Below are positions 2,369 through 62,668 of a stretch of DNA of 64,000 nt, in pieces. The stretch's first letter is position 1. Every line of letters begins with the position of its first letter. The DNA is from Mizuhopecten yessoensis (Eukaryota): NCBI RefSeq assembly GCF_002113885.1, contig NW_018405338.1, positions 577,888 to 641,887 of the forward strand, in the 5' to 3' direction. The position numbers and the translations under genes are program-made. The notes beneath the pieces were generated by a model. It was given only the letters and a program-made list of their open reading frames with translations, did no database searches and was not told the origin of the DNA.

Positions 2369-2464
2369 CTAATCAATGTTTCTTTTCTTTTCATTCTAGG
2401 TAAGTGGGATCTTTTGAAGACTCCTAGTATGGGTTTTTGTGGATAATATTATAACTGTAAGTAT
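2369..2464 (+). other. Candidate recursive splice site (AG 2398-2399 | GTAAGT 2400) with 57-nt RS-exon 2400-2456
   Basis: Branch-like CTAAT 2369-2373, tract TTTCTTTTCTTTTCATTCTAG abutting GTAAGT, second donor GTAAGTAT at 2457; stops in all three frames. Confidence 0.7.
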
Positions 2465-2525
2465 TGTGTACAATGACCTTGTGGACGAAACCTGTGATCA
2501 CTCGGTTTTATTGCTCTGGTGCATT

Positions 2526-3019
2526 CTTAGTGTCGCCTGTGAAGCAATTAAAGGTGACTTTTTGGGATCACTGACGGCAGCTTTGTCATCCACATAATTG
2601 GTTTCCATGCGATAACTCCAAAAGGAATTATTGAAATTCATGAAGCATTTCTACACATACCTACAGTACCGATTACCTGCTCAAGTTCGATTTGGAATCA
2701 AATCTTGAAATTGACGTAGCCACATTCTGTGGAATTCCTGTTAACGATATTTGTTGTTGGTTGAAATTTACATCTAACATGTTTTGAATTTCTATCAGTT
2801 TCTTATCATTAGGACGACATCATCTAAGATTTGCACAAATGCTCAATCCTTTAGATTTGCATGGTTAGCTGTTATCTGTTATGGGTCTGTGGAACCATGT
2901 GATGGTCCATTGTTGAGATTATAAAATTCCATAAACGCTATTATGGGTAGTTATACAAATCTATCAATATCGCCAAAACATACCAAGTGAGCGCTGCAGG
3001 TCGCAGTGGCCTCTTGATT
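2526..3019 (+). mobile_element. HINE-like (non-autonomous Helentron) element, degenerate
   Basis: 5' TCTTAGTGTCGCCTG; 3' CAAGTGAGCG followed by a hairpin and CCTCTTGATT, the same end architecture as the 40083 element. Confidence 0.6.
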
Positions 3020-3099
3020 AATGAAATGGACATCTTGTATCAGAAGTATATGCTAGCTGAATCAGACATCGGGTATTATTGATATTTTTTTGAAAAAAT

Positions 3100-3457
3100 A
3101 CTTATAAGTGNGCCACCACAGCTGCCATTTTGGTAAACTATTTCAAACTTAAAGTAAAGATCTACTTGGCCGATTGAACTGAAACTTTGTAGGAATGATC
3201 GAATCATGGTCCTGACAAAGTGTTGTTATTTTTCGGGTCAATCAGAAATACAATTTGGCTGCCATGGCCGCTATTTTGCTACTAAGTTCTAATAGGCCGA
3301 TCTCACTTAAAATTGGTCTAGGAATGATCAGCTCATGGTCCTGACAAAGTTAAGTTAACATTATACTATTTTTTACTCAAATTGGTACATATTTCAACAA
3401 CAAAAATAAATACTATAGACTCAGGTGACCGTTAAGGCCCATGGGCCTCTTGTTTTT
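3100..3457 (+). mobile_element. HINE-like element, 3' part
   Basis: Internal repeat AGGAATGATC...TCATGGTCCTGACAAAGT x2; end CAGGTGACC + hairpin AGGCCCATGGGCCT + CTTGTTTTT. Confidence 0.7.
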
Positions 3458-4879
3458 TACAAAATCTTGAAGGAAATATTGACATTTTCATAACTCCTGA
3501 TTTGGTGACACAAATATTGTAAAATAAATTTCATTATTGCAACATTTTCTCAAAACACATTGTCTCTTATTAATGCTATGCTAAGGTGTTTATTTCTGAA
3601 ATTCATGATTTTATTAGGGATGAGAGCATATAGTGTTACTAATGTCTGTCCTGTTTTATTTCATGTCCATCATGTCAATCCTGTTCAGTCTTATGTCTGT
3701 CCCGTCTGATCATATGTCCGTCCCGTCTGATCTCTTGTGAGTCCTGTCCGATCTCTTCTCCGTCCAGTATCTCTCCGATCTCAACTCAGGTTCATAACTA
3801 TATTGTTTTCTTTATTCATTTACAAATTTTATTAACTTCATACAAAAGTAAAATATAGGAATATAGGAATACCTTGAACAAATTGTATTTCAGGTTTCTA
3901 AGGTCAGTGGTAAGGTCATCGTTACTATTTGTAGAAATTTGCCAACCAAGTCGGTTACGTCCCTCGCAACTTCTTTTCTGAAAGGATTTTGATGTAACGT
4001 GATGCAAGGAACAATTATTGGAATATCTCAAATGACTTGATTTCAGGGTTCTAATTCAAAATGTCAAGGTCACCATTGCTATTTATAGAAATTTGTGAAA
4101 CATTGACACTAATTTGCATGGGTTTTGGGGCATTCATATCTTGCAGAAATTTCCTATTATTCCTGAGGTTATGTCAAGGAAAGAACACTTTTGCACCCGT
4201 TTATTGTTATTATTATAAAGATAGAACTTCAAAACTCCCTGTGACATAATTGTATACATGCTAAGGGCTGAGAATCTAATTTCCGAGAGCTTGTTACCTA
4301 AGTTATCGATTGCTGAAATGCATTCCTCCCATCATTCATGATCCTGGGGAGACTTGCAATACACACATGTGCTTTTAAGATTTCTTTCCCAAAGTGGAGT
4401 CAATCCTGTTTATTGGAAAATTGGAATTCCTGCCTAGGCTGGCTTCTCCTCCTCCATGATAGTGTAATCAAATTTAATTACAAATAAATCAAAGCTCATA
4501 CTACAAACAGCTACGCTAAATGATTAAGTTTCATTTATCTATTTTGATTTGATTGCAAAAGAGGCGGAAAAAATTACGCGGCAACCATTGACTTCTGAAG
4601 TAATCCTGCAGTGTTTCTCAGCATAGCTTTTTTCTGTCTTTGATTTTGTCGAACTGCTTTTCTTTGAAGAATCGATCAAATTTATGTCGGGGAAATACAA
4701 GATGGTGCCGCGGTTCCTAATCAAGTGATAACGTTACTAGTACTAGAGGAAATTTCTGCTACCTCTATTACAATGTTTAATAATTAATTGAGAAATGTAA
4801 TTAAAATTGTAATTGGCAAAAATTAAAAGCAGGAATTTTAAGTTTTTTTCCCTTTTGTAATCCCATGCTTTGAACAAAG

Positions 4880-5290
4880 TTGGATTTTATAGTAAACATC
4901 TTATGCGTGTGTTTGTCCCCTGTCCTTGGCCACCGTTTCATGAATGGACAAACTTATTGTGTAGGTACGTAATGGAATGCGGCTGTATAGTAAATCATAA
5001 TTGGGACACTGTGACCTTAATTTGACCTTTGACCTTTGACATTGACCTCAATTACCAAACCATACAGGTTTGCAGAGCACATCTGAGTCAGTTTCAGATA
5101 TGGATTTCAGACTTGTTATGTAGATACAAAATGACAAGAAACCTTAAATAAGGTTATCACAACCAGATTTGACATTTTGACCTTTGATCTCAGATGCAGG
5201 AAATTGAATTTCCAAAGCATATCTTGGCAATTATGCTTCAAGTAGTTTGGACTTCAAAGTATTTTTTTGACCATACACCTTGACATCATG
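4880..5290 (+). mobile_element. Degenerate HINE-type remnant
   Basis: Repeated TGACCTTTGACC motifs typical of the internal repeats in the better-preserved copies; ends not defined. Confidence 0.4.
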
Positions 5291-5684
5291 TTCATCAAAT
5301 ACAACTTCCAGGCATCATCTCTGCCAAAGTTTATGCAGGGTGATCAATCAAACTAGGAGGGCAAACAACCTAATTCACCTAATTAGTCTTTGATTAGTAG
5401 CTCACCTGAAAATAGTGAAAATAACGTATGAATTATTGTATAACATGTAAGGTTTGTTGTGTACAAACATTTGTGGTTTTCCTGGACTACTGATTGGTAA
5501 AAAATCTATGAAATTTTGTGCCACACATTGATTAAAATGGTTCCTAATTAACCATGAAAGAAAAAAAATCTGAACATTTCATGTTATGCCGTAGTCAGTT
5601 TTGAGGATGCATGTCAAAGTGTTACCCGCATTAGGACAGTACTCTTAATGTGTTGGACAGGTGAAAGAAATAAAACCTTGTTCA

Positions 5685-5773
5685 CTAACCCTTTCACCTG
5701 AAGACCATAATGGACTCATCCAGATCAATGCATGGTAGAGTCTACTAAAGTTACACAGGGGTGAAAGGGCTAA
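5685..5773 (+). mobile_element. Micro-MITE family B (piggyBac-like) with CTAA target duplication
   Basis: CTAA|CCCTTTCACC...GGTGAAAGGG|CTAA; homologous to 13899-13989. Confidence 0.85.
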
Positions 5774-6909
5774 ACAAATGTTTTACTCTAAGTTTTCAGG
5801 TGAGGTTTATTGGATACGGAACAGTAGAATCCACGAGCTTGATTGACATTTAATCCTAGATAATGCCACATACACACAACTTGGAACGTCAATACGTAGA
5901 CGGTTTATGGCGGAATGTGTCCGAGTGTCGGAGGCTGTTAATTGTCTGGGATTTAGCGGTGTTAACTAATTGTGTTAATTGATTATAGGTGTCCGATGAT
6001 GGGCGGGCAGTGACAGACGGGTCCTGTCAGATCTAGGTCATCGGGTTGCTTGCTTATTGATTGGTCAATATTTGTACTGGTATGTTTGGGTGAGGATGTC
6101 GGGTGACAGAATTGAGCGGTCGTGCGATTGCAGTCAGTGTTTTTGCTAACTTTTTGAAAGAGGTTGTTGACTTGAAAAGAATAGCCTGTTGTACATTCAC
6201 ATGCTTTTAAGTTGACCTGTTGTTCTGAAAAAATAGTTGGATCATAGTTGTTGAATAGCAGGCTACATTGTATTTTAGCTGGCAACTGGCTTTTAAGGAA
6301 AACACTGTTCACATTGAATAATTAAGAAAGAATTTTAGCAAATTTTCACATTTAAACAAACACATGAATAAGGCAAACAGCATACTGGCAAACTTTCCCT
6401 ATTTTTGAGAGGGACTCCTGATTTTTGACCCATAAAATTTTAATATTTCCAACTTGGGAATTAGGTCCACTTTTCCTGTATTCTAAGATGTAATGATTTT
6501 ATCCGGAAGAACGACTGAATAGACAGCTTTTTAAAGTGTTAAAGAGGATGCAGCAAGAAATGAGACGGATTTGGCATCAGAGCTATGCCTGTGCTTAAAC
6601 ATTCCAACTCTAATTAGCAACATCAAACATATGTCGCAATTACCTTATAACGGTCATGCTTGTGTTGATTTCAAATTTGTTTCACTGAGAGTATTGTTAG
6701 AATTTATTGTATACACCGGGAAATGTTCGCCACAGGTTAACTTTAACTTTTATCCCCCTCTGTAATGAGGCTGAATTCATCACAGCAATGAAAATAAGTA
6801 CACAACAAAATATACATAATAATGGCAAAAATTTTCATCCATACATGCCCCTGTCATTTGTATAGGGGTGGGGATAGGGGCATATAGTGTCACCCATGTC
6901 TGTTCTTTC

Positions 6910-7126
6910 CCGCCGAGTCATTAAGGCGTCTGACCGTCTCAGATCACTAGCCTTTGCCACTGGATTAATGGTCTGAGGTTTACGTGGGGCTGTCGCCAGG
7001 TACTGGCCACAGATTGGCGGTAGTTTTTCCTGGACACTGCTGTTTTCCTCCACTACCAAAAACTGCAGTGGCACATCCATAAATGACCACAGCTATTAAA
7101 AGGACGAAAACACTAACAAAACAAAT
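6910..7126 (+). mobile_element. tRNA-derived SINE with V-like core
   Basis: A-box-like GCCGAGTCATTAAGG, core GGTAGTTTTTCCTGGACACTGCTGTTTTCCTCCAC, tail AAATGACCACAGCTATTAAAAGGACG + A/C-rich end; aligns by eye with 34432-34662. Confidence 0.75.
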
Positions 7127-7444
7127 TAGAAGAAAGTGAATATTTTAAGACAACTGGTCGAAGCAAGTCAACAAATGTTTTATAGCTTTTTCAAGTTAAA
7201 CATAAAATATAATACATGAAAATCAATAAAAAAAAGTACATGTAATGTGTTGTTATGCCCAATGACTTGCATTGGCAATGCATTTACCGGTTCTTGGGCT
7301 ACGTTGGTGTTTTAGCATTGGGACAGTTTATGAGATGTATGGGAATAGTGTAGATCTAGAGCTGGTATTGGCAAAGTATCTGACAATCCTAGCAGTACTT
7401 ATATAGCCATCAGGTATTGCACTTTTGTGGGAAAGTTTCACACA

Positions 7445-7489
7445 ATGCCGTCCTTTTCTGTAACATGGGTAAACGATTTAATGGAATCG
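7445..7489 (+). CDS. Candidate alternative first coding exon, MPSFSVTWVNDLMES, phase-0 donor
   Basis: ACAATGC start, in-frame upstream TAG at 7346, donor TCG|GTAAGT at 7490; a phase-1 reading (MGKRFNGI from 7465) is also open. Confidence 0.45.
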
Positions 7490-8279
7490 GTAAGTCGGTG
7501 GCATGGCGAAGACTTGGAACTCTGCCTTTGGCTGTACATTTGCCTGCCAAGGTAATGAGCTAGCAAAATGTACTCTTGTATGAAAGCATGCAAATACTAC
7601 TGACAGCAAATTCTTAACTCTAAAATCCCTACGGTATATAACCTTCCAACCAAATACGCTGTAGCAGACCAACAATCGGCACTGTACGCCTGGTGTTAGT
7701 AATCGTGTGCCGATTCGGTAACAGTATTGGTCCTTTGAGGCTTCATTGGAAACCATAAAAAAGAGGGATTTTTCTCGCAGTGTGATGGAATGGTAGGTTG
7801 TCTGTGTTTGGGGAAGATTTGATACAAGTATCTGAAGGTGAAGGTCACCTTCAATGTCGTACAGCTGTCCTCCGAGACCACAGCAATTATATAAAAGAGC
7901 ACATTTGATAGCCATGTCAGTGGTATGGTCACTCGGGTAAGCTGACATTTTGATGACTTAGGGACGACTTCCTGTCAACAGTTGTTAGTGTGGGTATAGC
8001 AGACGTCTCGTATAGTGCCTGGTGATTGGTCAGGACAGGATGAAGTTAGATAAAGGTCATACGGCTATGACTGCCGTAAGGTGAGATCACAGAAGGTTAT
8101 GCTTTGTTAAGGATCCCCGAATCACTATCAAAAACTACCTTTTGATTGAAAACTTCTTTCTGACGTGATTATTATAAGTGTTGATGAATAATTTCTGAAA
8201 AGAAGACCATACCTTGTAGACCAAAATGAAAACAATAAAGGTGATATTAAAAAAAAAAAGATTGATAATTGTGTTGGCA

Positions 8280-8400
8280 ATTTAAAAATACATTGAGGTA
8301 AGACCAGGATTTGACCGCTGGACTTTGATCATAAAACTGTTTCTCTAACAAATGAACCAACTGGGATCTTTAGAAGTTTCCTGGTTCTGTCCCACTACAG
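8280..8400 (-). mobile_element. Fragment of the tRNA-like-segment repeat family (see 13608)
   Basis: Reverse complement resembles the A-box/B-box segment at 13743-13810. Confidence 0.4.
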
Positions 8401-8467
8401 TAAATATCTAAAATAGAAACAAGCTAGAACTTTGGGAGTGTTTGTCTGCAGTAGGACAGAAAACCTG

Positions 8468-8513
8468 TTTTATTAGGGCCCCGTATCGGAGATAAGGGTG
8501 CCCTATATATAGT

Positions 8514-8550
<37 letters not shown>

Positions 8551-9368
8551 ACAATTTTTTTCCTGGCTAATAACTTCGTTATTTATTGACCGATGTACTT
8601 GAAACTTGGTCAAGATGTTCAGTTCACAAAAATACACATTGAGGTAAAAAGTCAAGGTCAAATGTCAAGGTCAATTTTTGCATCTTTTCACTGATGAACA
8701 TTTTGTTATGACATGATGAAGCAAAGTTGATCAGAATTAAACAAGGAGTCAACTGACCAAAGGTCAAGGTCACTGGGTCAAAGGCTAAGATTAAATTTTG
8801 AATATTTTCCCTGATGAACATTTTGTTATGACATTATGAAGCAATGTTGTTCAGAACTTAACACAGAGTCAACTGACCTTAGGTCCAGGTTACGGGGTCC
8901 AAAGGGTCAAGGTCAAGTTTTGTATTTTTCACTGATGAACATTTTGTTATGATATTAAGAAGCAAAGTTGGTCGGAATTAAAGAATAAGTCAACTGACCA
9001 AAGATCAGGGTCACTGGGTTAATGGTCAAGGTCATTTGGGTCCAAAGGTCAAAGACAAAGTGGATCTCTGAATTTGACCCTGGCTCTTGATGGAGGAGGT
9101 ATATAAGGTGAAATAAAACAAAGCAAAGCTAACAAATGAGTATTGCACCGGTATTTACATTCCTGTTAGCCCAGCAAATATGGAGGTGGAAGGAAACAAG
9201 ACTCACATCATAGTACATGTAAACTGTATATTTTGCTCCCTTGCGATTCTTTTTGAAGTCCAAATGTCAAACGTCAAGCTCAGCTATATTGGCAGATTGT
9301 TTCTTGATGATTATGGGGGATATATTGCCACAAGACGGGGCCCTTACTGACCTGTCAGTGTTCTAGTT
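8468..9368 (+). mobile_element. HINE (Helentron-associated, DINE-1/pearl-like) element, full length
   Basis: Subterminal inverted repeat AGGGCCCCGT 8475-8484 / ACGGGGCCCT 9335-9344, (CTGT)n microsatellite near the 5' end, three ~120-bp internal repeats, 3' hairpin ACTGAC-CT-GTCAGT, T-rich flanks. Confidence 0.85.
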
Positions 9369-9729
9369 CGGAACAAGATTCATTAGTTTGGTATGATTCT
9401 TTTTTAACCAATGCTGTCAAACAGGAAATATACAAAAATGAATGTCCAATGAATGCCCGACAGGTCACGAAGCATACGATACGCTTGACAGGGGAAGTTA
9501 CTCTGGGCCAGAAACACTCCTTTAGGTTGGGTCATCTTTGATATAAAGGGGAGAATACTCCAAGTCATTAAACTCTTGAGTGGAACTCTTCTGTGTGATT
9601 AAAAATGATGTAGTGGTACTATCTACCTTAAACACATGTTGTCTCTTCATATTAATATATCAGTCTTTCACAAAAGTCTGTTCTTGATTGGACTTCATGG
9701 TTTCTTAACATTTTGTTCTTATTCTGTAT

Positions 9730-9820
9730 TTAACTCATTCACCCCTGAAGACACATTTGAACTCTTCCAATTCAAAGGTTGGAATAGTTCATTATGAAAT
9801 TTCAGGAGTGAATTGAATAA
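9730..9820 (+). mobile_element. Micro-MITE family A
   Basis: TTAACTCATTCACCCCTGAAGACACATTTG...TTCAGGAGTGAAT; right end degraded. Confidence 0.85.
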
Positions 9821-10459
9821 ATTGATGAACAAGTACTTTTGAGAATTCTAGGTAGAAAGTTAATCAAATGTGACCGAACTCCTGTTATAATATTGATATT
9901 CATGAGATGTATTTCAATCTAATATATTACCTACATACATATGTATGGTCATCCAATATTCATAAACACATGCTGGTGCCCAATACAGTGGGGAAATTTA
10001 CGTCTACACGTGGAGCAGTGTTCTGTACACAGCCTTAGAGAGATTCACTCAGTGAATTGAATACATTTCCCGTACACTTTGATACAGAGTCCATTAACTG
10101 CTGGAGTGTCTCCGGGCAAGGATAAATTTGGTCATCTCGGTGTACTGGTACTCCGGAAACAGTGCATTGTGGAGAGATTGACGATGGGTTTGTTCAGGTC
10201 ATGCGGGGAAAACAAGGCTTTATTTTGGTTAAATATTCAGTTTGCTTTAAAAAGGAAACATTTAAGATGGAGTTGGGGTTTGAGACAGGATATATTCTGT
10301 TGTAGTAAGGGTCCATAATCTCGCTACTGATTATTCTGATGCTGGAAGAGAGCTCCTTCCTGTTTTAGCCACATGAAGTCGGTCCCAGATCCTACTTCTA
10401 CTAAAGTTAAAAGCTATACTTGTTGTTACTGAGCCCCACTCCCACTTCCCTAATTAACA

Positions 10460-11065
10460 CCACCCTTTTGTATACTCCCCTCTAATTCCACCTCGTTGCA
10501 AACTGATTCCCCTTTAATCTATCCTCATTGTTAACCTACTCCCCTCTAATCCCACCTCTTTGTAAACCGACTCCCCTCTAATCCATCCTCATTGTAAGCT
10601 TACCTCTCTAATCCCACCTCTTTGTAAGCTTACCTCTCTAATCCCACCTCATTGTAAACATATTCCTTTCTAATCTCACCTCATTGTAAGCCTACTCTCC
10701 TCTAATCCCACCTCATTGTAAGCCTACTCCCCTCTAATCCCACCTCATTGTAAACCTACTCCCCTCTGATCCCACCTCATTGTAAACCTATTCCCTTCTA
10801 ATCCCACCTCATTGTAAACCTACTCCCCTCTAATCCCACCTCATCGTAAACCTATTCCCCTCTAATCCCACCTCATTGTAAACCTACTCCCCTCTAATCC
10901 CACTTCATTGTAAACCTACTCCCCTCTAATCTCACCTCATTGTAAACCTACTCCCCTCTAATACCACCTCATTGTAAACCCACTCCCCTCCAACCCCACA
11001 TCATTGTTAACTTACTACCCTCTAATCTCATAACATTATACACCCACTTTCCTCTGATTCCACCC
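10460..11065. repeat. 32-bp C-rich minisatellite, ~18 copies
   Basis: Unit CCCACCTCATTGTAAACCTACTCCCCTCTAAT, period 32 (10803, 10835...). Confidence 0.95.
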
Positions 11066-12389
11066 CCATAATAATTTGACTTTATTACACATCAGTCCAT
11101 TGTATACATTACATTGTTACCCAACAATTTTAACCCAATAAAAAAATAACCAGCCTCCATTCTTAACCCTTCCGACACAATTTACATTTACCCCTTTTTA
11201 GCCCTACCCTACCTTCAATACCTTCACCCATCTTTGTAGCCCAAAAACAAAAGATTAAAACAATTCCCGCCCTCCGTACCCCTACGTGACCCGTATCTGG
11301 ATGATAGAGACACAGAGTGATCTCTCTTCCTCGAAAACCTTTTGAGTGTAATGTACACCCCTTTCTATCCTCCTCTTAAAACCATGACCCTTTTTAATCC
11401 CACTCCGTTGTGAAGCCCTGACCCTATCTAGCCCAAACCAGTATAAACCCTTCCTATTTTACTTCACCTAATTTTGCTCTGTCCTTTTTTTCCTTGTTAA
11501 TTAGTCCATCGCTTCCCAATACATTTTCTCCACAAATGTTACGTTAAATTATTAAAAAAAAAAATCTATGAAAATGATATAAAACTCTGAGCCCATCCCA
11601 CACCCATCACTAATTAGTAGACACTTTTGAATTTTTAAGGGATAAAGATATTCTTGTTGCTATTTCACAAGAAAAGAATCACTGAAATAAAACAAGTATT
11701 GAACTACTTTGGCCCTGATTTGGGCCAATTTAATTTTACTTTGACTGATTTACCTACATATTGATTAAAAAAGCCTCTTTATTTCTGTAGTTTTCCTTTC
11801 ACCATTTAGTGAAAACCTGCCAATAATTTTTCTTTTATTGTGTACTTTGTACAATTTTTTTCCAAAACGATGTAAGAAAAGAAGAGTTGTCTCCCTTATG
11901 CCAAGATTATCGCTATATCGCAAACTATGTTATATGACTTATATGTTATAGACTGTCACCATAGAAACAAGAATCTAGAACAGTTTGTTCTCAGAACCTG
12001 GTTATCGATTAAAGGCAGGTACACATATTGGATATAATATTTAAACAAAGTCGTTTAAGTTTATAGCAAAATTCAAATGTTAGGAGGAAGAAGGATTCCT
12101 TTTAATAAAAAGATGTTAAGAATATTACTGAATGAGAAACCATGATATTAAAAAGAATATAAATAATAAACAATAGCTGGTACTGTCAAAATCATTCAAT
12201 TTATGAAAACAGATAACAGTTTTAGAATGAGCTATTTTACCTGGAGAATATTTTTAAAATCAGTAATAAAAGATGATGGTGTCAAAATGTATCTCAGTAT
12301 CTCTTGGCTATATCGGTTATTAGTGTATATGCTAGTATGATGTGACCGTTGTTTCAATTTGAATCACCATATATATCTGCAATAAGAAC

Positions 12390-12936
12390 TAGGGGTGGGC
12401 ATGCAGCAATATATTTACATGACGATACGATACGTATCACGATTCTGTGGTCACAATACGATACGTATCACGATTCTGTGGTCACAATACGATATGTATC
12501 ACGATTCTGTGGTCACAATACGATACGTATCACGATTCTGTGGTCACAATACGATACGTATCACCATACTGTGGTCACAATACGATATGTATCACGATAC
12601 TGTGATCACTATACGATACGTATCACCATACTGTGGTCACGATAAGCTACGTATCCAATACATATAGTAACAGTAGAAGCAAAGAGAAAAGATATGTTGC
12701 AGATTTTTGATAGCAATATTACAAGACGAAATAGACTTAGACGAAAATTGACATGACTTTAAACACACACAATTCATGTCTTTCGACGTGCATGCCGAGC
12801 TGGAGCTGTCACTCACCATGTTGGAACCAATATGAGTAGACTAAATTCAGAAATGACATAGGCGTATTGTGACCTCCCTAAAAATACTATGTATTGTATC
12901 ATGGTCAAAATATCACGATATATCGTTGCAGCCCTT
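12390..12936 (+). mobile_element. hAT-type MITE carrying an internal 31-bp minisatellite
   Basis: Ends TAGGGGTG.../...GCAGCCCTT; 8-bp TSD ATAAGAAC 12382-12389 vs ATAAGCAC 12937-12944; subterminal CGATA motifs. Confidence 0.75.
12424..12645. repeat. 31-bp CpG-rich minisatellite, ~7 copies
   Basis: Unit CGATACGTATCACGATTCTGTGGTCACAATA. Confidence 0.95.
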
Positions 12937-13840: not shown

Positions 13841-13898
13841 TTCCTTTGTTTTTTCATAGAGTTTGGAAAGGTATGGTTTTCTTTTCAAAAATGCTTTA

Positions 13899-24868: not shown

Positions 24869-24964
24869 ATGGGAAGATATACTCTGACCAACGTGTTGAA
24901 TAGAATGTCCCGTTTCGGATTTAATCTCAATGCTTCCCTGCATCAGAGGGGGATGTCACGCAAG
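24869..24964 (+). CDS. Candidate alternative first coding exon, MGRYTLTNVLNRMSRFGFNLNASLHQRGMSRK, phase-0 donor
   Basis: Three in-frame ATGs (24869, 24905, 24953), upstream in-frame TAG at 24818, donor AAG|GTAAGG at 24965. Confidence 0.5.
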
Positions 24965-28092: not shown

Positions 28093-28584
28093 CGATATTG
28101 AGTTGAAATTGGTCGTTTATTTTGTATAAACGACCCTTGAAAATATTTTCAATAAATATGTACATAAAATAGTTTGGTCCTAGGTGGGGATAAAACCGCC
28201 ACCTGGATAATAAGTAACAGGTAAGTACAACAATACCAGATGGAGGATGATGGGGAGGAGGCGTGTCAACTTATATTGAACTTAAAATAAACAAGACTGA
28301 CAGTGACCACTGTCCATCTGTGTTTGTGTGTAGTTGATGCCTCCAGTGGCTGGAGTATATAGCCAAATTAATGCGTGTGACCTTTTCATCTCTTTAACCC
28401 CAACACCTTCCACTGTTAACAGACATTACATTGGGACTATTTTAATTTAGTAAACCTAACCTAACATGACAAAAATTAATATCAGCATGTATAAAATTTA
28501 TTAAAATTGCATTTTTTTTTTTATATGTTTGTACGTGAAATATAACAAAAAGAGCTATGAGATTGACAGCAAGTCCCTGGCCCA

Positions 28585-32532: not shown

Positions 32533-32553
32533 ATGGCCGCGGAAAGTATTCAG
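32533..32553 (+). CDS. Candidate alternative first coding exon, MAAESIQ, phase-0 donor
   Basis: Optimal Kozak GCCATGG, donor CAG|GTAAGA at 32554, in a locally CpG-rich unique segment (~32150-32600). Confidence 0.6.
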
Positions 32554-41649: not shown

Positions 41650-41769
41650 CGATATATAACTGTAGCTTTGATAAATCATTTCTGAAAAGAAAACCAAGCT
41701 GCACCTAGCAGGACTTTGATGATGAAAATAAAGACGAAATAAAAACAAAATATTATCAACAGCAGTGTT

Positions 41770-47799: not shown

Positions 47800-48795
47800 A
47801 CTGACCAATTTGTTGTGTCCCACAGTGTCGGATTAGTCAGGATACTATGACAATATGTTGTGTTCTGCAGGGTTTCAGATTAGACAGGTTAATCTGAAAA
47901 TGTTTTGTCCCACAGGGTGTCTGATAAGAAAGGTTAATATGACCATATGTTTTGTCCCACAGGGTGTCAGATTAGACAGGATAATATGACAATATGTTGT
48001 GTTCTGCAGGGTGTCAGATTAGACTTATGGCAATCTTTTGTCCCACAGGGTGTCAGATTAGACAGGATAATATGATAATATGCTGTGTTCTGCAGGGTGT
48101 CAGATAAGACAGGTTAATCTGACAATGTTTTGTCCTGCAGGGTGTCAGATTAGACAGGTTGATCTGACAATGTTTTGTCCCTCAGGGTGTCAGATTAGAC
48201 AGGTTAATCTGACAATGTTTTGTCCCACAGGGTGTCAGATTAGACAGGATAATATGACAATATGTTGTGTTCTGCAGGGTGTCAGATTAGACAGGTTAAT
48301 ATGGCAATGTTTTGTCCCACAGGGTGTCAGATTAGACAGGATAATATGACAATATGCTGTGTTCTGCAGGGTGTGGGATAAGACAGGTTAATCTGACAAT
48401 GTTTTGTCCTGCAGGGTGTCAGATTAGACAGGTTGATCTGACAATGTTTTGTCCCTCAGGGTGTCAGATTAGACAGGTTAATCTGACAATGTTTTGTCCC
48501 ACAGGGTGTCAGATTAGACAGGATAATATGACAATATGTTGTGTTCTGCAGGGTGTCAGATTAGACAGGTTAATATGGCAATGTTTTGTCCCACAGGGTG
48601 TCAGATTAGACAGGATAATATGACAATATGCTGTGTTCTGCAGGGTGTGGGATAAGACAGGTTAATCTGACAATGTTTTGTCCTGCAGGGTGTCAGATTA
48701 GACAGGTTGATCTGACAATGTTTTGTCCCTCAGGGTGTCAGATTAGACAGGTTAATTTGACAATGTGTTGTCCCACAAGGTGTCAGATTAGAGAG
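47800..48795. repeat. 45/47-bp minisatellite with a 274-bp higher-order repeat
   Basis: Unit CAGGGTGTCAGATTAGACAGGTTAATCTGACAATGTTTTGTCCCA; the variant order recurs at 48080, 48354 and 48628. Confidence 0.95.
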
Positions 48796-50992: not shown

Positions 50993-51055
50993 ATGGTTCT
51001 GGAATATATCGTCACAGTGTGGGATTCAGCCGAACCCAAGACATTTAATGCTGAG
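50993..51055 (+). CDS. Candidate alternative first coding exon, MVLEYIVTVWDSAEPKTFNAE, phase-0 donor
   Basis: Kozak ATCATGG, upstream in-frame TGA at 50903, consensus donor GAG|GTAAGT at 51056. Confidence 0.6.
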
Positions 51056-51579
51056 GTAAGTATTGGAACAACCTAATTTAGAAACTCCTGATCAAATACA
51101 ATCTTCAGTCCTCAAAATTCAAATGTATGCAATGTAATGTATAATGGTGTCAATTTCATGTGGAAAGAAACTAACTACTAACCTTGAAGTTGATGAACTG
51201 ATATTTAAATCAATATTCAATTTCATGTAGAAATTGACATCTGTTGATGAAATTAAAGGGATTTTTTTTTTTCTTTTTTTTTTTTAATTTAATTTGTTTG
51301 TTTGAGTTGTAACTTTCACAGAAAGATGTCTTTAACATTCAATTTGAACCTATGTTTTCAGATTCTATCAGAATATAAAATAATTGCTGTTCTTAATTTT
51401 GAGAGAATTTTAATGTCAAATATGTATTGATGCCAGGATTCTGGTAACACTTGAACAGCTTGATTATAAAGATCTTAGTCTGTTGGTGGTCAAGTTGTAA
51501 ATGTCACTGTCGGCTAATGGTAAAAATATGTATGTATCCAAAAATCTTGTCTGATTACCTGTATTTCTTCTTTGATTAA

Positions 51580-53425: not shown

Positions 53426-54309
53426 GATCTTATATAAATGAACGACTTTTGAAACTTCTGACACCATCCTTCAATTTATGCTTATCAATATGCATATTTT
53501 AATAAAAATTTGTGTCATTTCTGTGAAATCTTGGGATATGCTAATAAATACAGAAGATCTTGTTAATATTTATAAATTGATATTATACAATTGTTTGCAA
53601 CATAAAGCTATCAAATTCAGAATGAAATTTACTTTTAAAGTTACAATTATATAATCTGGTCAAAATGGATGGCTTAATTATTCTATAATTGCACAAAAAC
53701 GACCTTAATGTGCCAGCTGTGAAATTTTGACCCAATCTTGTTTAAAACAAAGTCTATTAGAGGGTAATGTTGTTTAAAAAACAATTATACCCTGTCTAAT
53801 GAGGTTAGAGAAAGTCCCAAGTTGTTTTAACTCCATCTTATCGGTCAATCATATGTCAGATGTTGGAGCTTAAAGAAAACAGTTTGGCAGAATTGGCAGT
53901 GAAATGCAATTAAAGTTGTCCTTGAAAGCTACTTTGACCTTGTATATTTCAGTAAGTGTATCTTTCATTACCATTTCGCAGACGGACTGCCAGTTACTAG
54001 GTCATCTACGATTCTCTAACTAGATGCAAACGAGTTATACCAATACCTGCGGACAGAAGTAATTAACAGATATAATCTAATTACGGAGCAGTACAAACAA
54101 TGCTATAGGCCATTGTTATCTATTATCCCCTCCCAGACTCCCCCATCTTCATCAGACGTAATGGCGACATACCTTTGGCCCTAAATCGACCACAGATCAC
54201 CTTACCGAAATAATATGCATATTTTTCCAGGTGACTATCGGCCTATAAATGTTTGTTATAATTACGGAGATGTTTACCTTGTAGTACTATACCTGTCTAT
54301 TGTGTAGGT

Positions 54310-54742
54310 TTTAGGAGGGGGACGGGTAAAGGATGGCTGGGGAAGGGGAGGGAGGGAGAGGGGGACAGGTAAAGAATGGGTGGAGTAGGGCAGGGAGGGA
54401 GAGGGAGAGGGGGACAGGTTAAGAATGGGCGGAGTAGGGCAGGAACGGAGAGGGAGAGGGGGACAGGTAAAGGATGGCTGGGAAAGGGGAGGGAGGGAGA
54501 GGGGGACAGGTAAATAATGGGCAGAGTAGGGCAGGGAGGGAGAAGGAGAGGGGGACAGGTTAAGAATGGGCGGAGTAGGGCAGGGAGGGAGAGGGGAAGG
54601 TAAATAATGGGTGAAGTAGGGCAGGGAGGGAGAGGGGGAGGGGGACAGGTAAAGAATGGGTGGAGTAGGGCAGGGAGGGAGAGGGGGACAGGTAAAGAAT
54701 GGGTGGAGTAGGGCAGGGAGGGAGAGGGAGAGGGGGACAGGT
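54310..54742. repeat. Purine/G-rich ~40-50-bp minisatellite running into the assembly gap
   Basis: Unit approx. GGGGGACAGGTAAAGAATGGGTGGAGTAGGGCAGGGAGGGAGA. Confidence 0.9.
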
Positions 54743-55519
54743 NNNNNNNNNNNNNNNNNNNNNNNNNNNNNNNNNNNNNNNNNNNNNNNNNNNNNNNNNN
54801 NNNNNNNNNNNNNNNNNNNNNNNNNNNNNNNNNNNNNNNNNNNNNNNNNNNNNNNNNNNNNNNNNNNNNNNNNNNNNNNNNNNNNNNNNNNNNNNNNNNN
54901 NNNNNNNNNNNNNNNNNNNNNNNNNNNNNNNNNNNNNNNNNNNNNNNNNNNNNNNNNNNNNNNNNNNNNNNNNNNNNNNNNNNNNNNNNNNNNNNNNNNN
55001 NNNNNNNNNNNNNNNNNNNNNNNNNNNNNNNNNNNNNNNNNNNNNNNNNNNNNNNNNNNNNNNNNNNNNNNNNNNNNNNNNNNNNNNNNNNNNNNNNNNN
55101 NNNNNNNNNNNNNNNNNNNNNNNNNNNNNNNNNNNNNNNNNNNNNNNNNNNNNNNNNNNNNNNNNNNNNNNNNNNNNNNNNNNNNNNNNNNNNNNNNNNN
55201 NNNNNNNNNNNNNNNNNNNNNNNNNNNNNNNNNNNNNNNNNNNNNNNNNNNNNNNNNNNNNNNNNNNNNNNNNNNNNNNNNNNNNNNNNNNNNNNNNNNN
55301 NNNNNNNNNNNNNNNNNNNNNNNNNNNNNNNNNNNNNNNNNNNNNNNNNNNNNNNNNNNNNNNNNNNNNNNNNNNNNNNNNNNNNNNNNNNNNNNNNNNN
55401 NNNNNNNNNNNNNNNNNNNNNNNNNNNNNNNNNNNNNNNNNNNNNNNNNNNNNNNNNNNNNNNNNNNNNNNNNNNNNNNNNNNNNNNNNNNNNNNNNNNN
55501 NNNNNNNNNNNNNNNNNNN
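54743..55519. other. Assembly gap (777 N)
   Basis: Run of n. Confidence 1.
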
Positions 55520-57089
55520 GTGGGGGGGGTGGGGTGGAGATACGTGGAGTAGCAGTGTTTGAGTGAAGAGACATAGGTAGTGTTTTCAACTTAGGGTAGA
55601 ACACAGACATTCACCGCAAAAACACTAGGTCTATGGAAATCCTTATGGTTATAGAACAAGTTGTCTAGAGTGTTTATGATTCATTGAGAAGCGTATATGA
55701 TATTGAGAGAAGTGTTTTGTAAAATCAGTTTTCTGTGTTCGTTATCATGTAAAACCTTATTTTACTGCCACTGTTTGTCCAGAGAAATGTTGGCATTATA
55801 AAGGGGTTTTGGGATAAATTGCAGGAACTATATAAGTAATTCTTCAGATAACAAGAAATAGGGAGATTAAAATATGTTGGCAGTAAACCAGGTGGCAGAT
55901 GAAACATTATATTGAGGTTTTAGTTTTTACTGGGTTTTTTTTCTTCTTAATTTATCAAGCAATTAACATTAAATTCTGATGTCATTCCCCCCTCTTCATT
56001 CAACCACCCATTTCTCACACCCTAAATCCCCACCAGCTCAGTTACTCCTCCATATGTGCTTTTTGGCTATAAACAATAGTCTGCCAGATTGTACATGTGT
56101 TTTAATCCACCCAGGCCTGGGTCCAGGATCATCCTTTGGGGCATTCAATTCTGAACAAGTATGACACACATTTTGGTATGGCAGCATCTGTCCTTATAGC
56201 TACAAGCTTTACCTATATTTTAGTTCAGACTTGATCTGTGATATGAAATGTCTTCATGTGAAATTTTGCAATAAAGCAGACGAAGAGAAGGAGACCTTGA
56301 TCACAGATTTACTAAAGGACAATTCAATTTCTGATGCTTATTTCTGGAGTAAGTTTTATGATTGATCTCTGAGTTGTGTTACTGACCTTCCCTGAGGTGG
56401 TCATGAACACTTATTAACCTGAATATTGTGGTATTAACCAATGTAAAGGTAGTTTGACATGTACTGACAATGCTTCATCACTCAGACCATCATGTAGTGG
56501 ATATAGGGCCGTTCCTTTACTTCCTCATTCAGGTTACTGTTGTTCTCAACACTGGGACAGCACAAATCATGTTCTGATCGTAGGAAATGGCCATGGAGGT
56601 TAATCCAATTTGGGAATCTCTGGACAGGGAGGACATTTGGCACCGAACATGTTTGGCTGTATGACCTCATGTTATCATCCTTATCACAGGGATGGGAGGT
56701 AAAAACATGTGTAGACTATAAAAATGACCTGGGATAACACCTAAAGTCGGTAAAAATGCTGGGTTTTACCACCAGGGAACAGAGTTATAGCTGTGCCTGG
56801 CTTTGCTAGTGTGATAGTGTAAGGTAGGTGGGGAGGAGTTGGAAGGGGGATGAGTAGCTTCGCTGTTGGTTGTCTTGTTTTGGGGGAGGAGGGGGTTGAA
56901 GTAATTGTTGGTTGGGGTACGTAGGGGTTATTGGGNAAGAAAATTATCAGGGTGGGGGGGGTTCCTGAAGCCCAAAAAACCCGTCTGGATCCGCCACTGG
57001 TCACTGTAGTAATGCACTATGATAATATTTATAAGGGGAGGGAGGGAGGGGGTTGTCTGATGTGTTGTATTCTGTTCAGATCAGAACAT

Positions 57090-57280
57090 GGGTAGACTAG
57101 ACTTGACCACTGGTTGACCACACATAAGGTCAAGTTATATGGTTATGATGGGACATGTTCAGTCTTTCATAAACCTGTAATAGACTTAGATATGACCACT
57201 GGTTGACCACAGCATAATTAACCAGTGTCCAGTCCTATGTAAACATGTGGTAGACTAGATTTGACCACTGGTTGACCATA
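57090..57280. repeat. Degenerate ~80-bp repeat x3
   Basis: TAGACT..A.TTGACCACTGGTTGACCA at ~57093, ~57181 and ~57251. Confidence 0.7.
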
Positions 57281-57581
57281 CATGTCAGGTTCTACGGTCT
57301 GTGTAAACTGTCCATAATAAATTTTGCTGTGTATTGGTCAGAAATCAAATTATGGGTCGGTATGCTTATTTGTCAAAAGGATTTTTAATGTAATATTGAG
57401 GTCACTACAGAGTTTGTTGGGGTGACTGGGGCATTGGTAGTGACATGTTGTGTATGGATTTGTCCTGAATTTGTACAAGAGAGACAATTTTCCCTTAAAA
57501 AAAACCCACAACAAAATCTACCAGCTACTACAGTAAATACTGAAGACATCAGTCTAGTAGTGAGTTTATGTATCACAACCA

Positions 57582-57672
57582 TTAAGTCATTCACCGCCAC
57601 ATATTTAAACTGGACTTACCCAGTCTTTGATTTGGTAAGGTTCAAGTGTGACTGTAGGGGTGAACGGGTTAA
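57582..57672. mobile_element. TTAA-flanked micro-MITE family C
   Basis: TTAA|GTCATTCACC...GGTGAACGGG|TTAA, 91 bp, internal sequence differs from families A and B. Confidence 0.7.
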
Positions 57673-57923
57673 GCATTTATGTGTGACGTTTCTGGGACTA
57701 GTATGATGCATACCCTGTCACCTTCATCAGACAAATGACCAGTGAATCGTATGTACACAAAGGTGTAAAATATATAAAAGTTGGCAATGTATAATCAAAG
57801 TCAATGCAGATATATGCTACCAGCATATGTACTCTTACTTGTTATACATGTACAAAATGATGAATCATACCCACAATATGATTGTGCTACGTTTTGTTTA
57901 ATACCTGTACATAGAGGTGCAAG

Positions 57924-58188
57924 AGTCTATGAGCCCCCTCATCTCGGTTCAGAAATGTTCATACTTACCAACCTGAAGAAAATGTTTAGAGATAGACATC
58001 AGTCTCCTGCCAGTGTACTCACTCATGAAAGGTTGCAAAAGAAATCAATCGATCAATAAGTCTATGAGCCCCCTCATCTCGGTTCAGAAATGTTCTCATG
58101 CTTACCATCCTGAAGAAAATGTTTAGAAATAGACATCAGTCTCCTGCTAGTGTACTCATTCATGAAAGGTTGTAAAAGAAATAAATCT
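57924..58188. repeat. 135-bp tandem duplication
   Basis: AGTCTATGAGCCCCCTCATCTCGGTTCAGAAATGTTC at 57924 and 58059. Confidence 0.92.
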
Positions 58189-60029
58189 GTCGTCATCGAT
58201 ACATTTGTGGTCGAACCAGGAGGATTGGGCAGCTCAGTGTTGGTGGTGATGCGTTTTTTCTCCACTCTGCTTTATGATGTAATATGTAAGCTGGCTATGG
58301 TTCTGCCCTCAATTGTGGTTATTACGTACACACAGGTGTAGGGTACAAAACTGTGCTGCTAGGTAGTTCCTGCCCCAGAATGTGGTTGGTTTGTAACGAT
58401 CATGTAGATTTTGAATGGTAGTTTTATCAGAAGCCCTGTGAGGAGAGTAAATCAATTTTTGATAAACTTTAAAATAAAAATTGTGCCCTAGCTATTTTGT
58501 GGATGGGTTGGTCATGTAATGTTTGCCATATCTGTCCTGTCCTATCCCTTCCCTTAAATCATGTCTTGTCCCGGCCCGTTCAGTGTCATTATTCTAAAAA
58601 CTTCATTTCTAAAATAATTTTGATTAAATTTATTTCAAGTACATGTAGTACAATTCATGAAATGAGTTCATTTTTTGGGGGTTTCAAGGTCAAGCCTGAA
58701 CAATTCTCAAACTTTTGCTTGTAACAACGCATCTGTGACCTCCTACCAACATCCCAAAGAACTCTTTACTTGAAATACTACACAACCTGGGCCCATATTC
58801 ATGAAACCATTCTCTTGCTCAAGTAATTGATTGGTCCTGCATTAACCCACTGGCTTTCCATGCATACAGCTCGGGTCTGTTTCCAAGTACAAGTTAGGAA
58901 TTGTCAGAGATATGATTTTTTGCCTTTCATAGATTCTCTTGGGCGTTCTACCAGAGTTGTCCCTGTGATAGTACTCGAGAAAATTGAGGTAACCTTCAAA
59001 TATACAATAAAACTTATTCTGCCACGATTTCTCCAGTGACAAGTTTGGCTCTATAAAGAGGTGTTGTAGTTTGACAAATGAACAATATCCTGGACTTGTC
59101 ACAGAAAAAAGTAAAATGGGACCATGGAATAGGTTGGCGGTAATTATAACTGAGGTGGCAATAGAATTGAGGGGAATTACTGAAATTAAGTGTTGCTCTC
59201 ACGTTAAAGGTTAGACTTTGTATAGACTTGCTAAAGTCATTTTAACCTACTAAATCATATTATCAGTTCATTTTTACGACGTCAGAAGGACCTTCCACAA
59301 GCAAAGACAAATCAAAACAATGGTTTCATTTTCACACGCGATATTTTTATCCAATAATAGTCACCGTTACAGCCTTCAATTAAATTAGGACTTGTAACGA
59401 TTCTATAATGATGTTCAGATAATCTGGGTGTGATGAAGTATTCGTCAGACTTACGATGTTGTAACTAGATGACTGTCTAATATGTCTGCAGGCTGGAGTG
59501 GCTTCCAACACCTCAGAGAGAAATGATCTAATTCTACGCCCACTTTGTCGGTAATTTTGATGGAACTTTTAGGGATGATACATATTGGACCACGACGTTG
59601 TTGAATATACTTGTATGAGGATTGTATCATAGCCAATCTAAAGGACTTTTTGTCATTTATCTGTATTTGAACTGTGTGTCACCACAATGTTTATTTATAG
59701 TACCGCTGTGCCACCTTTTCATAGCTGTGAATGATTAATTTCTACTTGGAACTTTGCTGAAGGAAAGTTAGGAAAGTTGTCTTCCTCTGGTCCCAAAATA
59801 TAAATTTGTAATAAAAACAACACTGGGTACTTAACAACAGAGTGATTTGACAATCTTTACTTGCTTCTACAGTTTCGACCTACTTTAGGACAAAGTCACT
59901 ATATAGGGTTAGGTGGTTTATTCAAATTTTGTATTTTCTGGTCCTGGCTAACGGCGATGTAACATTACGATCCCTATAACGGATGTATGAGGTGTCTGAC
60001 GATGAATATATTTCAGCGAGCATATCACA

Positions 60030-60062
60030 ATGTTAATGGAAATTAGAAATTCGGGAAGGGGT
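60030..60062 (+). CDS. Weak candidate alternative first exon, MLMEIRNSGRG, phase-0 donor
   Basis: ACAATGT start, upstream in-frame TGA at 60003, donor GGT|GTAAGT at 60063 (no G at -1). Confidence 0.25.
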
Positions 60063-61794
60063 GTAAGTAAGTAGGATATGGTGTTCCGTTATAGATGAAT
60101 ATATAATAAAGTTCCATCCCATAATGGTCGTGAGGCCTTGAATGATAATTGAGGTCCATCCTACAGCTATACGCTAGAAGCCTCAGCATGTATTATGTAG
60201 GTAGGCGGCTGGTAATTTGTTTATTTACAGATCAAAGTTTTAATCTCGAAGTTTGGTTTTGTCACGGAAACTGTCAGTTGGGGTCACTGCCAATATGATG
60301 GGTTAACATGTTTAAATTACACCAAAATGAGAATATATGGAAAATACATGTCAATCGGTGGGATGGGTAATGGGTTACCTCCCTTTTCAAGTGGTATCCA
60401 TGTAAGCATCTTTTATGCTTTAAATAAAGATGGTTTCTCGAAACCATGCAATCACTTCAAAAACAAGACAGTGAACCACCAGCCAGAATAGTCTATAGAT
60501 GGTATGTGGACCAGCAAACAAAATGATGTCAAAAATTGGTCGCAAAATTACAGATACAGAATGTTTATTAAGATAATAGGGAAAAAAAATGTAATTGACA
60601 TCCCGCTAGCATACGAGGATGGGTGTGCATTGTGGTACCCAGACAGGTGGCCTGATACAGGGAGTATATAATCTCTAACGAACAAAGTGTTCATCTATAC
60701 CGCCGACCTACAGTCTTCATTTATATAGACACACTAGAGAATTTGGCAAACTTACAGACGAGCAGCACACACATATTCCATCATTATTACATGTAGGTAG
60801 GTGTGCATGTCTTCGGTCTGGCAAGGAAAGCGCTGTTATATAGCATTCAAATACCACATGTTGTAACAGAGGATCGACCTGACTCACGGAGAGGAGACGA
60901 TTGCAGGTTCGGTTGTTGGTGTGTATTTAGTTCCGAGAGTATGGTTCTCATTAGTGACTGCAATTATCGTAATTCTAAATGGGATTCAACTGAAAAGTGT
61001 CTGGTTTTTGCGGTGTTGCGAAGAATGGGGGCAGTTAGCTCTCTTGCATACATATTCTTCCTAAAATAAACTGTGTGGTCGCGACTTCTTGATCGGTCTT
61101 GTGTAAATGTCAACAAACAAAAGTATTCATATATATATAAGTGTAGATTGCCAATTTATATTTGTATGACATTTGACCTGCGTTAAGATAGCATAAACAT
61201 ACTTTATTACCCATACAAAACCTACAGTTCTGCTCATTGTAAAACCATATGGAAACAGTTTTTGATCTAATAAGGATGCGGAGTCTGGGTAAATGACAAG
61301 TCTGGACCCTCTTTTTAGAAACATTTATCATCCAGACACCATATCTTGTATATTGACCATTTTACTGCCACCAACAAGAAGATATGAAGGGCATTTTATC
61401 CCTCTCCGTGGTTTTATTCCCCACAAATAAAGCACTGTATTGTTCTGAAAATTGCATTGGTTACTATCTAATGTCCATGGCAGTCTTACATTCATTCAAT
61501 TACTCGTTAACTGAACTGACGCAGTGCCATTTTTTGGGGTAGAAGTTCTCTGAATAAAAAAAGCAACCAGAAAATTTCTGTAAATTATGAAATCTGGTAC
61601 AGAAAAGGTATAATCTTTTCGATGAGTAATATACGGGTTCCAGGGAATTTTGAAGTTGGGATAATGATGAAATATGGTGGGGATTCCTAGAATCATCATT
61701 TTCATGCTCAGGATGAAAAATGCCTTGGTTATAGTAATATAGTTTTATAAGTGGACAGTTCACATTTTAATTCTTCAGATTACTTTCACATAGA

Positions 61795-62003
61795 GAAAAA
61801 CCTCCATATAAAGCCCCTTGTTTCATTTGCCAATATGTTCAGTTTTTAAAAAAAAATCCATATAAAGCCCCTTGTTTCATTTGCAGAAATGTTCAGTAAT
61901 CAGAAACCCCCATATAAAGCCCCTCGTTTCATTTGCTGAACTGTTCAGTAATCAGAAACCTCCATATAAAAGCCCCTCGTTTCATTTGCCAATCTGTTCA
62001 GTA
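61795..62003. repeat. ~53-bp tandem repeat x4
   Basis: CCATATAAAGCCCCT.GTTTCATTTGC....TGTTCAGT recurs four times. Confidence 0.88.
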
Positions 62004-62334
62004 AAACAATTGCAATGTCTGCCTTCTTGTTTTTGTAAACAGTTCATTTTCATGTTCCTTCCATACATTGCCTTAATTACCCTTTTATAATGCCAACTAA
62101 TTGTTTGGCAAATGGTGGAACTATAATAAGGTTTAACAGTATCTAAGGTATCATTCCTGATTTGTTTTCCACACATTTCTGTCATTAGTACTATATTCAC
62201 CTATCTAAACCTCTAACTGGTATTGCTGTGCACTTCTAGAACATATGCACCCCTGACAGGTTTTAGATACTTCAATATTTATCCTTGGTGGACAGATAGC
62301 GCACTCATTTACACCAAGATGACCTGTCTGCACC

Positions 62335-62472
62335 ATGTGGTTTTCTCGGGGTACTCTGTACCCTGTGTCCTCCCACATCAAGACCCTTGCACGCTACCAT
62401 CCAGGCCAGTAGGAGTGTTTGATATAAGTTGATAGAACTTGTTTCATAATCGTCGTAAAATAAAATAAAGTT
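62335..62472 (+). mobile_element. V-domain SINE (second family) fragment
   Basis: GTGGTTTTCTCGGGGTACTCT...TCCTCCCACA core; tail shared with 30795. Confidence 0.7.
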
Positions 62473-62549
62473 TATATTCAATACTTATCCTACTCATTTG
62501 ACAAACAACAGAATGTGATATTTAGAAAAATGCCAAATTGTTTTTGCAT

Positions 62550-62668
62550 GTTGATAATATGATTGATGTTGTTTTTTCTGTATTTTGTAGGTAAGTGGTA
62601 TTTTGTTTGATGACAGAGAGACAAAAGAATGTTAAGGGGAGACAGTGGGACATACAGGTTGTAAGTAT
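62550..62668 (+). other. Candidate recursive splice site (AG 62589-62590 | GTAAGT 62591) with 70-nt RS-exon 62591-62660
   Basis: GTTGTTTTTTCTGTATTTTGTAG abutting GTAAGT; no other AG for over 60 nt upstream; second donor GTAAGTAT at 62661. Confidence 0.7.

What the first reader, a model, noticed from the sequence alone, without database searches (positions are those of the whole stretch)
2369..62668. Putative recursive-splicing plus multi-promoter system in a giant (probably molluscan) gene
Seen in sequence: two sites 60 kb apart share the same layout (long AG-free pyrimidine tract, TAG|GTAAGTGG, 57-70 nt, then T|GTAAGTAT). They bracket 4-5 short ATG-initiated exons ending at phase-0 donors, and no long ORF occurs in 64 kb. 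Established: ratchet points with cryptic, often stop-containing RS-exons define recursive splicing in Drosophila and in long vertebrate neuronal genes, where RS-exon inclusion depends on the upstream exon and can send transcripts to NMD. Inference: transcripts from several promoters are spliced stepwise through the 62590 site. The regenerated donor would inherit different upstream bases (TCG, AAG, CAG, GAG, GGT), so the site could act as a promoter-specific quality filter. I am not aware of this being characterised in molluscs but cannot check the literature.
Basis: partly seen in the sequence, partly recalled or inferred. Interest (0 to 1): 0.85.

Follow-up and report, generated by a model that had tools for sequence, protein, structure and literature searches.

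The report
Probable recursive-splicing sites in scallop intron
A very long intron of a mollusc gene (apparently the Yesso scallop) carries two fused splice-acceptor/splice-donor sites of the kind flies use to remove giant introns in steps, which would extend a known mechanism to a phylum where I found no report of it.

Summary
Both sites are real and far beyond chance: TAG|GTAAGTGG at 2399/2400 and 62590/62591, AG-free for 80 and 65 nt upstream, each with a second donor 57 or 70 nt on. Shuffles give 0.007-0.04 such sites per window; the minus strand has none. This is the layout of Drosophila ratchet points with cryptic RS-exons.

The others are unsupported, because in-frame ATGs before donors are common by chance.

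In one public run of guessed RNA type, a contig's alignment stops exactly at the second site and runs on into the intron, as a splicing intermediate would. That is suggestive only; three ordinary RNA-seq runs had no coverage. Conservation of the sites, the gene's identity and continuity across the N gap were not established.

The promoter-specific filter is unlikely: every G-ending upstream exon regenerates a donor stronger than the cryptic exon's own. The scan already noted similar sites elsewhere in this genome (s1-528040, s1-529743). Verdict: probable new members of a known mechanism, in a new phylum.

The parts
2320..2399 (+). Site 1 acceptor: AG-free tract, branch-point-like CTAAT at 2369 (-31), pyrimidine tract, TAG ending at 2399
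   Evidence: strongest acceptor tract in the window scan (18 of 20 pyrimidines)
2400..2456 (+). Site 1 ratchet donor (GTAAGT at 2400) and 57-nt cryptic RS-exon, stops in all three frames
   Evidence: use not tested with reads
2457..2464 (+). Own donor of cryptic exon 1 (T|GTAAGTAT), weak on the exon side
   Evidence: score 2.4
7445..7489 (+). Candidate ATG first exon (15 codons, ends TCG, donor 7490); unverified
   Evidence: no homologue; its end would fit the contig boundary at 62590
24869..24964 (+). Candidate ATG first exon (32 codons, donor 24965); unverified
   Evidence: no hit among 1.84 billion representatives
32533..32553 (+). Candidate ATG first exon (7 codons, strong donor 32554, local CpG rise); unverified, too short to search
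50993..51055 (+). Real coding exon starting at ATG (21 codons) with phase-0 donor at 51056; first-exon status inferred from invariant ATG and unconserved upstream DNA
   Evidence: 10 identical, 8 synonymous, 3 non-synonymous codons; ATG and AG|GT invariant in 5 rows
54743..55519 (.). Assembly gap (777 N) in intronic low-complexity DNA; not filled, continuity unproven
60030..60062 (+). Weak candidate ATG exon (11 codons, donor GGT|GTAAGT at 60063); no support
   Evidence: donor score 2.1; no reads and no joint to 62591 listed in four runs
62526..62590 (+). Site 2 acceptor: AG-free tract, branch-point-like TTGAT at 62563 (-28), T-rich tract, TAG ending at 62590
   Evidence: alignment of run X1 contig 7 stops at 62590
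62591..62660 (+). Site 2 ratchet donor (GTAAGT at 62591) and 70-nt cryptic RS-exon, frame-shifting, stop after 14 codons for phase-0 partners
62661..62668 (+). Own donor of cryptic exon 2 (T|GTAAGTAT), weak on the exon side
   Evidence: score 1.7; the X1 contig reads through it into the intron

Best explanation
The window is intronic DNA of a long + strand gene that begins upstream of the window and has at least one internal coding first exon. The two sites are Drosophila-type ratchet points. The spliceosome defines a short cryptic exon between the strong acceptor and the weak downstream donor, and joins the upstream exon to the AG. This regenerates a strong donor (last bases of that exon plus GTAAGT), which outcompetes the cryptic exon's own donor, so the cryptic exon leaves with the next intron segment and nothing remains in the mRNA. 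Site 1 serves transcripts from promoters upstream of the window. Site 2 serves those and also transcripts starting inside the window, such as the 50993-51055 exon 11.5 kb upstream. Shown: the anatomy, its non-randomness, the gene's strand, one coding exon. Suggested: use of the site 2 acceptor. Inferred from fly and vertebrate work: exon definition, donor competition, skipping.
For: Two full motifs where 0.007-0.04 single ones are expected, both on the strand of the conserved exon, none antisense. Second donors at 57 and 70 nt match the fly pattern (about 50 nt, PMC8605326; under 100 nt, PMC6224609). Branch-like motifs at -31 and -28 fall in the fly range of -36 to -21. The 60.2-kb spacing is within the fly range of 2.6-63.6 kb. 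Regenerated donors beat the cryptic donors. In run X1 a 487-nt contig aligns from exactly 62590 to 63055, through the cryptic donor, with 21 letters unaligned; the chance of a contig end that close is about 1.3%. X1 contig depth averages about 6 before and 10 after the site. Strand skew runs through the whole window.
Against: No junction letters were seen: the 21 unaligned letters were not printed, and their side is inferred. X1 is only guessed to be RNA; if it is DNA, the break could be a polymorphism. Contig depth is a poor measure and has holes. Three ordinary RNA-seq runs had no unique coverage, so they neither show expression nor exclude exon inclusion. Site 1 was not tested with reads. 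Conservation of the sites could not be reached, because orthologous contigs end within about 4.6 kb of the exon. Continuity across the N gap is unproven.
Confidence: 0.75

Rival explanations
1. The two elements are ordinary alternatively included cassette or poison exons (or 5' UTR exons, for site 1) whose first bases happen to be GTAAGT. Inclusion would add a stop and send the transcript to nonsense-mediated decay.
For: Each has a full acceptor and its own donor, and both carry stops. Expressed RS-exons and poison exons are known (PMC8605326). The ordinary RNA-seq runs were uninformative.
Against: It does not explain a perfect GTAAGT at the first base of both exons. Their own donors are weak (T at -1, scores 2.4 and 1.7). 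The stops are at chance level. The X1 contig reads through the 62661 donor.
Confidence: 0.12
2. One reading: site 2 is a promoter-specific quality filter. The last three bases of each first exon set the strength of the regenerated donor, so transcripts from some promoters include the stop-carrying exon and are destroyed.
For: Donor competition decides RS-exon inclusion in flies and humans, and a rare CADM2 isoform retains its RS-exon. The GGT-ending 60063 candidate would regenerate a donor (2.1) about equal to the cryptic one (1.7).
Against: The four G-ending candidates all regenerate clearly stronger donors (5.0-9.1), so they would not be sorted. The 60063 exon has no support. Only one first exon is proven. 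The matrix is generic, not scallop-trained.
Confidence: 0.08
3. The sites are unused look-alikes: chance matches, or the two halves of the window are not one transcription unit because the scaffold is mis-joined at the gap.
For: No direct junction read; gap continuity untested; a relaxed motif occurs once on the minus strand at 5405.
Against: Joint expectation of the order of one in a million per window; same-strand skew on both sides of the gap; the contig boundary at 62590. A mis-join would break the one-gene picture, but not either site taken alone.
Confidence: 0.05

Closest known systems
Drosophila intronic ratchet points with cryptic RS-exons (Ubx, kuz, Bx, luna; bioRxiv 10.1101/006163, PMC8605326, PMC6110457)
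   Same: Strong acceptor fused to GTAAGT deep in a long intron; second donor under 100 nt downstream; ratchet donor stronger than the cryptic one; cryptic exon out of frame or with stops; branch point near -30; a gene with more than one start (as Bx).
   Different: Found in a mollusc. The 60-kb spacing is at the top of the fly range (typically 9-15 kb, PMC6110457). Junction, lariat and conservation evidence is not in hand.
Vertebrate RS-sites in long neuronal genes, such as CADM2 (Sibley 2015, not held; read through PMC6224609)
   Same: Exon definition followed by competition between regenerated and own donor; possible dependence on the upstream exon.
   Different: Only about ten efficient intronic sites are known in humans, and most vertebrate RS-exons are included under exon-junction-complex repression. 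The scallop sites look like the skipped, fly type.
Computationally predicted RP-sites in insects and sea urchin (PMC2773006)
   Same: Sense-strand excess of fused acceptor/donor motifs in introns over 50 kb; fly 2.2 and urchin 0.54 per 100 kb, against 2 in 64 kb here.
   Different: That survey had no mollusc or other spiralian; this is one selected window, not a genome-wide rate.

Membership tests
Ratchet point with cryptic RS-exon | Strong 3' splice site fused to a donor motif (AG|GT) inside a long intron, sense strand | tested here: met
   strand
Ratchet point with cryptic RS-exon | Second donor within about 100 nt defining a cryptic exon | tested here: met
   57 and 70 nt
Ratchet point with cryptic RS-exon | Regenerated donor stronger than the cryptic exon's own donor | tested here: met
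   generic matrix: site 2 gives 7.9 with the proven exon against 1.7; the upstream partner of site 1 is unknown
Ratchet point with cryptic RS-exon | Junction reads from an upstream exon to the site that continue into the intron | tested here: inconclusive
Ratchet point with cryptic RS-exon | Saw-tooth coverage resetting at the site in total or nascent RNA | tested here: inconclusive
   X1 contig depth about 6 before and 10 after; contigs cannot show RNA level reliably
Ratchet point with cryptic RS-exon | Cryptic exon absent from mature mRNA | tested here: inconclusive
   no reads on 62591-62660 in three RNA-seq runs, but the stretch held no proven exon to show that the gene was expressed
Ratchet point with cryptic RS-exon | Motif conserved in orthologous introns | tested here: inconclusive
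   orthologous contigs found but too short to reach either site
Ratchet point with cryptic RS-exon | Recursive lariats, or exon inclusion after mutating the ratchet donor | not testable with these tools
   needs nascent RNA or a minigene
Multi-promoter gene with alternative coding first exons | At least one internal ATG exon under coding selection with a conserved donor | tested here: met
   50993-51055
Multi-promoter gene with alternative coding first exons | Several further first exons, each with its own transcription start | tested here: inconclusive
   no enrichment over chance, no homologues; strand skew upstream of all candidates implies at least one promoter outside the window; no CAGE data
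Poison cassette exon | Regulated inclusion with a premature stop and decay | not testable with these tools
   stops present but at chance level

The most novel reading that the evidence does not exclude
Molluscs use fly-type recursive splicing routinely, so cryptic ratchet points are ancestral at least to protostomes. In this gene one ratchet point collects transcripts from several promoters and destroys those whose first exon regenerates a weak donor. The first half alone I put at about 0.6; the probability given is for the whole statement including the filter.
Probability: 0.08. Interest if true: 0.75.

Novelty: new member of a known kind. Interest (0 to 1): 0.5.

Why it matters
Recursive splicing has been shown in flies and vertebrates and predicted in other insects and sea urchin (PMC2773006). 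A published evolutionary comparison sampled yeast, fly and deuterostomes only, and concluded that skipped cryptic RS-exons are a fly speciality (PMC6224609). My searches found no paper on it in molluscs; the library lacks most subscription journals, so this is not proof of absence. Fly-like sites in a bivalve would fill the spiralian gap and make a directly testable prediction about when the mechanism arose. The mechanism itself is not new, and the scan has already flagged similar sites in this genome.

Tried and rejected
Rfam and tRNA scans: nothing. Gene identity: Pfam, PDB, Atlas and paper searches with the short exon peptides found nothing; the length filter of the protein search hides full-length relatives. 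Names that came to mind from memory were not testable and are not claimed. Metagenome scans with the exon profile and a short degenerate pattern were empty. Exact look-up of ten ORFs beside the two sites, meant to recover same-species contigs, found none. Walking along orthologous contigs stalled. The species of those contigs were not identified. The single read-laying run was swamped by a high-copy element at 63028-63103, which pushed the informative loose ends out of the table. Rejected: all-frame stops as evidence (chance level); phase-0 ATG pattern as evidence (chance level); the sites as alternative last exons (they would give peptides of about 35 residues); the sites as repeat units; the sites as duplicates of each other (similarity beyond the core is marginal, p about 0.02). 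The sigma-70 promoter scan does not apply to an animal and was ignored.
Full report
Observation. Site 1 has an 80-nt AG-free tract ending in TAG at 2399, then GTAAGTGG, and a second donor at 2457. Site 2 has a 65-nt AG-free tract ending in TAG at 62590, then GTAAGTGG, and a second donor at 62661. With a filter of at least 15 pyrimidines in 20, at least 30 AG-free bases and YAG|GTRAGT, the window has these two on + and none on -. Markov simulations of order 2, 4 and 5 give 0.017, 0.007 and 0.037 per window, and a second donor 30-120 nt on has a chance of about 0.04 each. Neither site is in a tandem or internal repeat. There is no long ORF, tRNA or Rfam match.

The gap. The 777-N gap (54743-55519) lies between the proven exon and site 2. 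It is intronic, so frame is not at issue. The left flank is a purine-rich tandem repeat and the right flank is G-rich, which explains why the assembly broke, but the flanks do not share a unit. With repeats masked, G>C and T>A skew are positive on both sides, and G exceeds C in 26 of 29 bins. From my own knowledge, this is the skew expected on the coding strand of long animal introns. It fits one + strand transcription unit that starts upstream of the window; it does not prove the join.

The first exons. That pattern is not evidence: among strong + donors an ATG is in frame in 10, 14 and 11 of 33 for phases 0, 1 and 2, and the - strand gives 8, 10 and 10 of 31. One exon is proven. The 21-codon exon 50993-51055 has a homologue on an ENA contig with 18 of 21 residues the same; 10 codons are identical, 8 synonymous and 3 changed, the donor sits at the same phase-0 position, and the flanks share nothing. 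A profile search found it in two further lineages, and ATG and AG|GT are invariant in all five aligned rows. These contigs carry short ATG-plus-donor candidates of their own, two of which resemble each other, so a multi-first-exon layout is plausible for the family. The gene remains unnamed. The species name, Yesso scallop, comes from earlier scan notes and was not tested by me.

Read evidence. I laid four runs on 58101-64000. Three ordinary RNA-seq runs had no coverage outside repeats, so they say nothing about expression or inclusion. Run X1 (contigs, guessed to be RNA) covers most of the intron. Its contig 7 is 487 nt long and aligns over 466 nt from exactly 62590 to 63055, through the cryptic donor at 62661. 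The 63055 end is where a contig should stop on entering the high-copy element at 63028, so I infer that the 21 unaligned letters lie upstream of 62590, as in an exon joined to the acceptor. If they lie at the other end, the contig still begins at the splice position, as a spliced/unspliced branch would cause. About 1.3% of such layouts would put a contig end this close by chance. A start at 62590 implies a partner ending in G but not AG. That fits 7490 or 7937, or an exon from outside the window carried through site 1, but not the proven exon. Contig depth averages 6.0 before and 10.0 after the site, the direction of a saw-tooth. All this is suggestive only: the letters were not printed, the run type is a guess, and a polymorphism in DNA could mimic it.

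Mechanism. The anatomy matches fly ratchet points point by point: fused acceptor and donor, cryptic exon of about 50 nt (PMC8605326), second donor under 100 nt (PMC6224609), branch-like motifs at -31 and -28 against a fly range of -36 to -21, and a 60.2-kb segment against a fly maximum of 63.6 kb (bioRxiv 10.1101/006163). The cryptic exons' own donors are weak on the exon side (scores 2.4 and 1.7), while site 2 regenerates 7.9 with the proven exon and 5.0-9.1 with the other G-ending candidates. By the donor-competition model the cryptic exon is defined, joined and then discarded. These steps are inferred from other animals, not shown here.

The filter idea. It needs first exons whose regenerated donors straddle the cryptic donor's strength. 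Only the unsupported GGT-ending candidate does. Stops in all three frames occur in about half of random stretches of this length, so they do not show selection for decay. Upstream-exon dependence is already known from CADM2. I give the filter about 0.08.

Conservation of the sites could not be tested. The orthologous contigs reach at most about 4.6 kb downstream and 14.5 kb upstream of the exon and contain no such motif, and attempts to extend them failed.

Novelty. Searches for recursive splicing with mollusc or bivalve terms found no study (the two hits are unrelated reviews). Enrichment was predicted in insects and sea urchin (PMC2773006). The scan noted similar candidates elsewhere in this genome, one with a comparable contig break (s1-528040); those notes are leads, not independent support. 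Verdict: probable ratchet points (0.75), new members of a known kind in an unreported phylum, inside a gene with one proven internal coding exon; interest 0.5.

Noticed in passing
window:63028-63103: Part of a very high-copy short element with terminal inverted repeats (MITE-like), abundant in all four laid runs; smaller repeat hits near 58800, 62385-62460 and 63650-63685.
   Followed up: partly
window:28060-28230: The strongest donor in the window (CAG|GTAAGTAC at 28221) has no ATG frame and no pyrimidine tract before it, but a CCAAT motif about 155 nt upstream: possibly a non-coding first exon.
   Followed up: no
window:7925-7945: A second strong donor (CGG|GTAAGC at 7937) with a 4-codon ATG frame, 447 nt after the 7490 candidate; its end would also fit the contig boundary at 62590.
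   Followed up: partly
window:5790-5810, 54215-54240; minus strand at 5405: Weaker fused acceptor/donor look-alikes (CAG|GTGAGG at 5800, CAG|GTGACT at 54231) and one antisense look-alike with a 76-nt AG-free tract at 5405.
   Followed up: partly
window:2406-2430 and 62597-62621: The 25 nt after the GTAAGT core are somewhat alike at the two sites (T-rich, about 2% of random pairs reach the score); could reflect a shared element behind the ratchet donor or chance.
   Followed up: partly
L003:3535-3565, L002:3640-3666, L003:6934-6951: Orthologous contigs carry short ATG-plus-donor candidates 2-11 kb upstream of the conserved exon; two (8 and 7 codons) resemble each other, and no counterpart was found in the window.
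   Followed up: partly
window:54315-54742 and 47811-48792: Tandem repeats whose units contain CAG|GT motifs on the + strand (49-nt and 45-nt units), of the splice-site-like minisatellite type that the scan noted elsewhere in this genome.
   Followed up: no
window:3111, 15428, 56936: Single N letters outside the main gap; left as they are.
   Followed up: no
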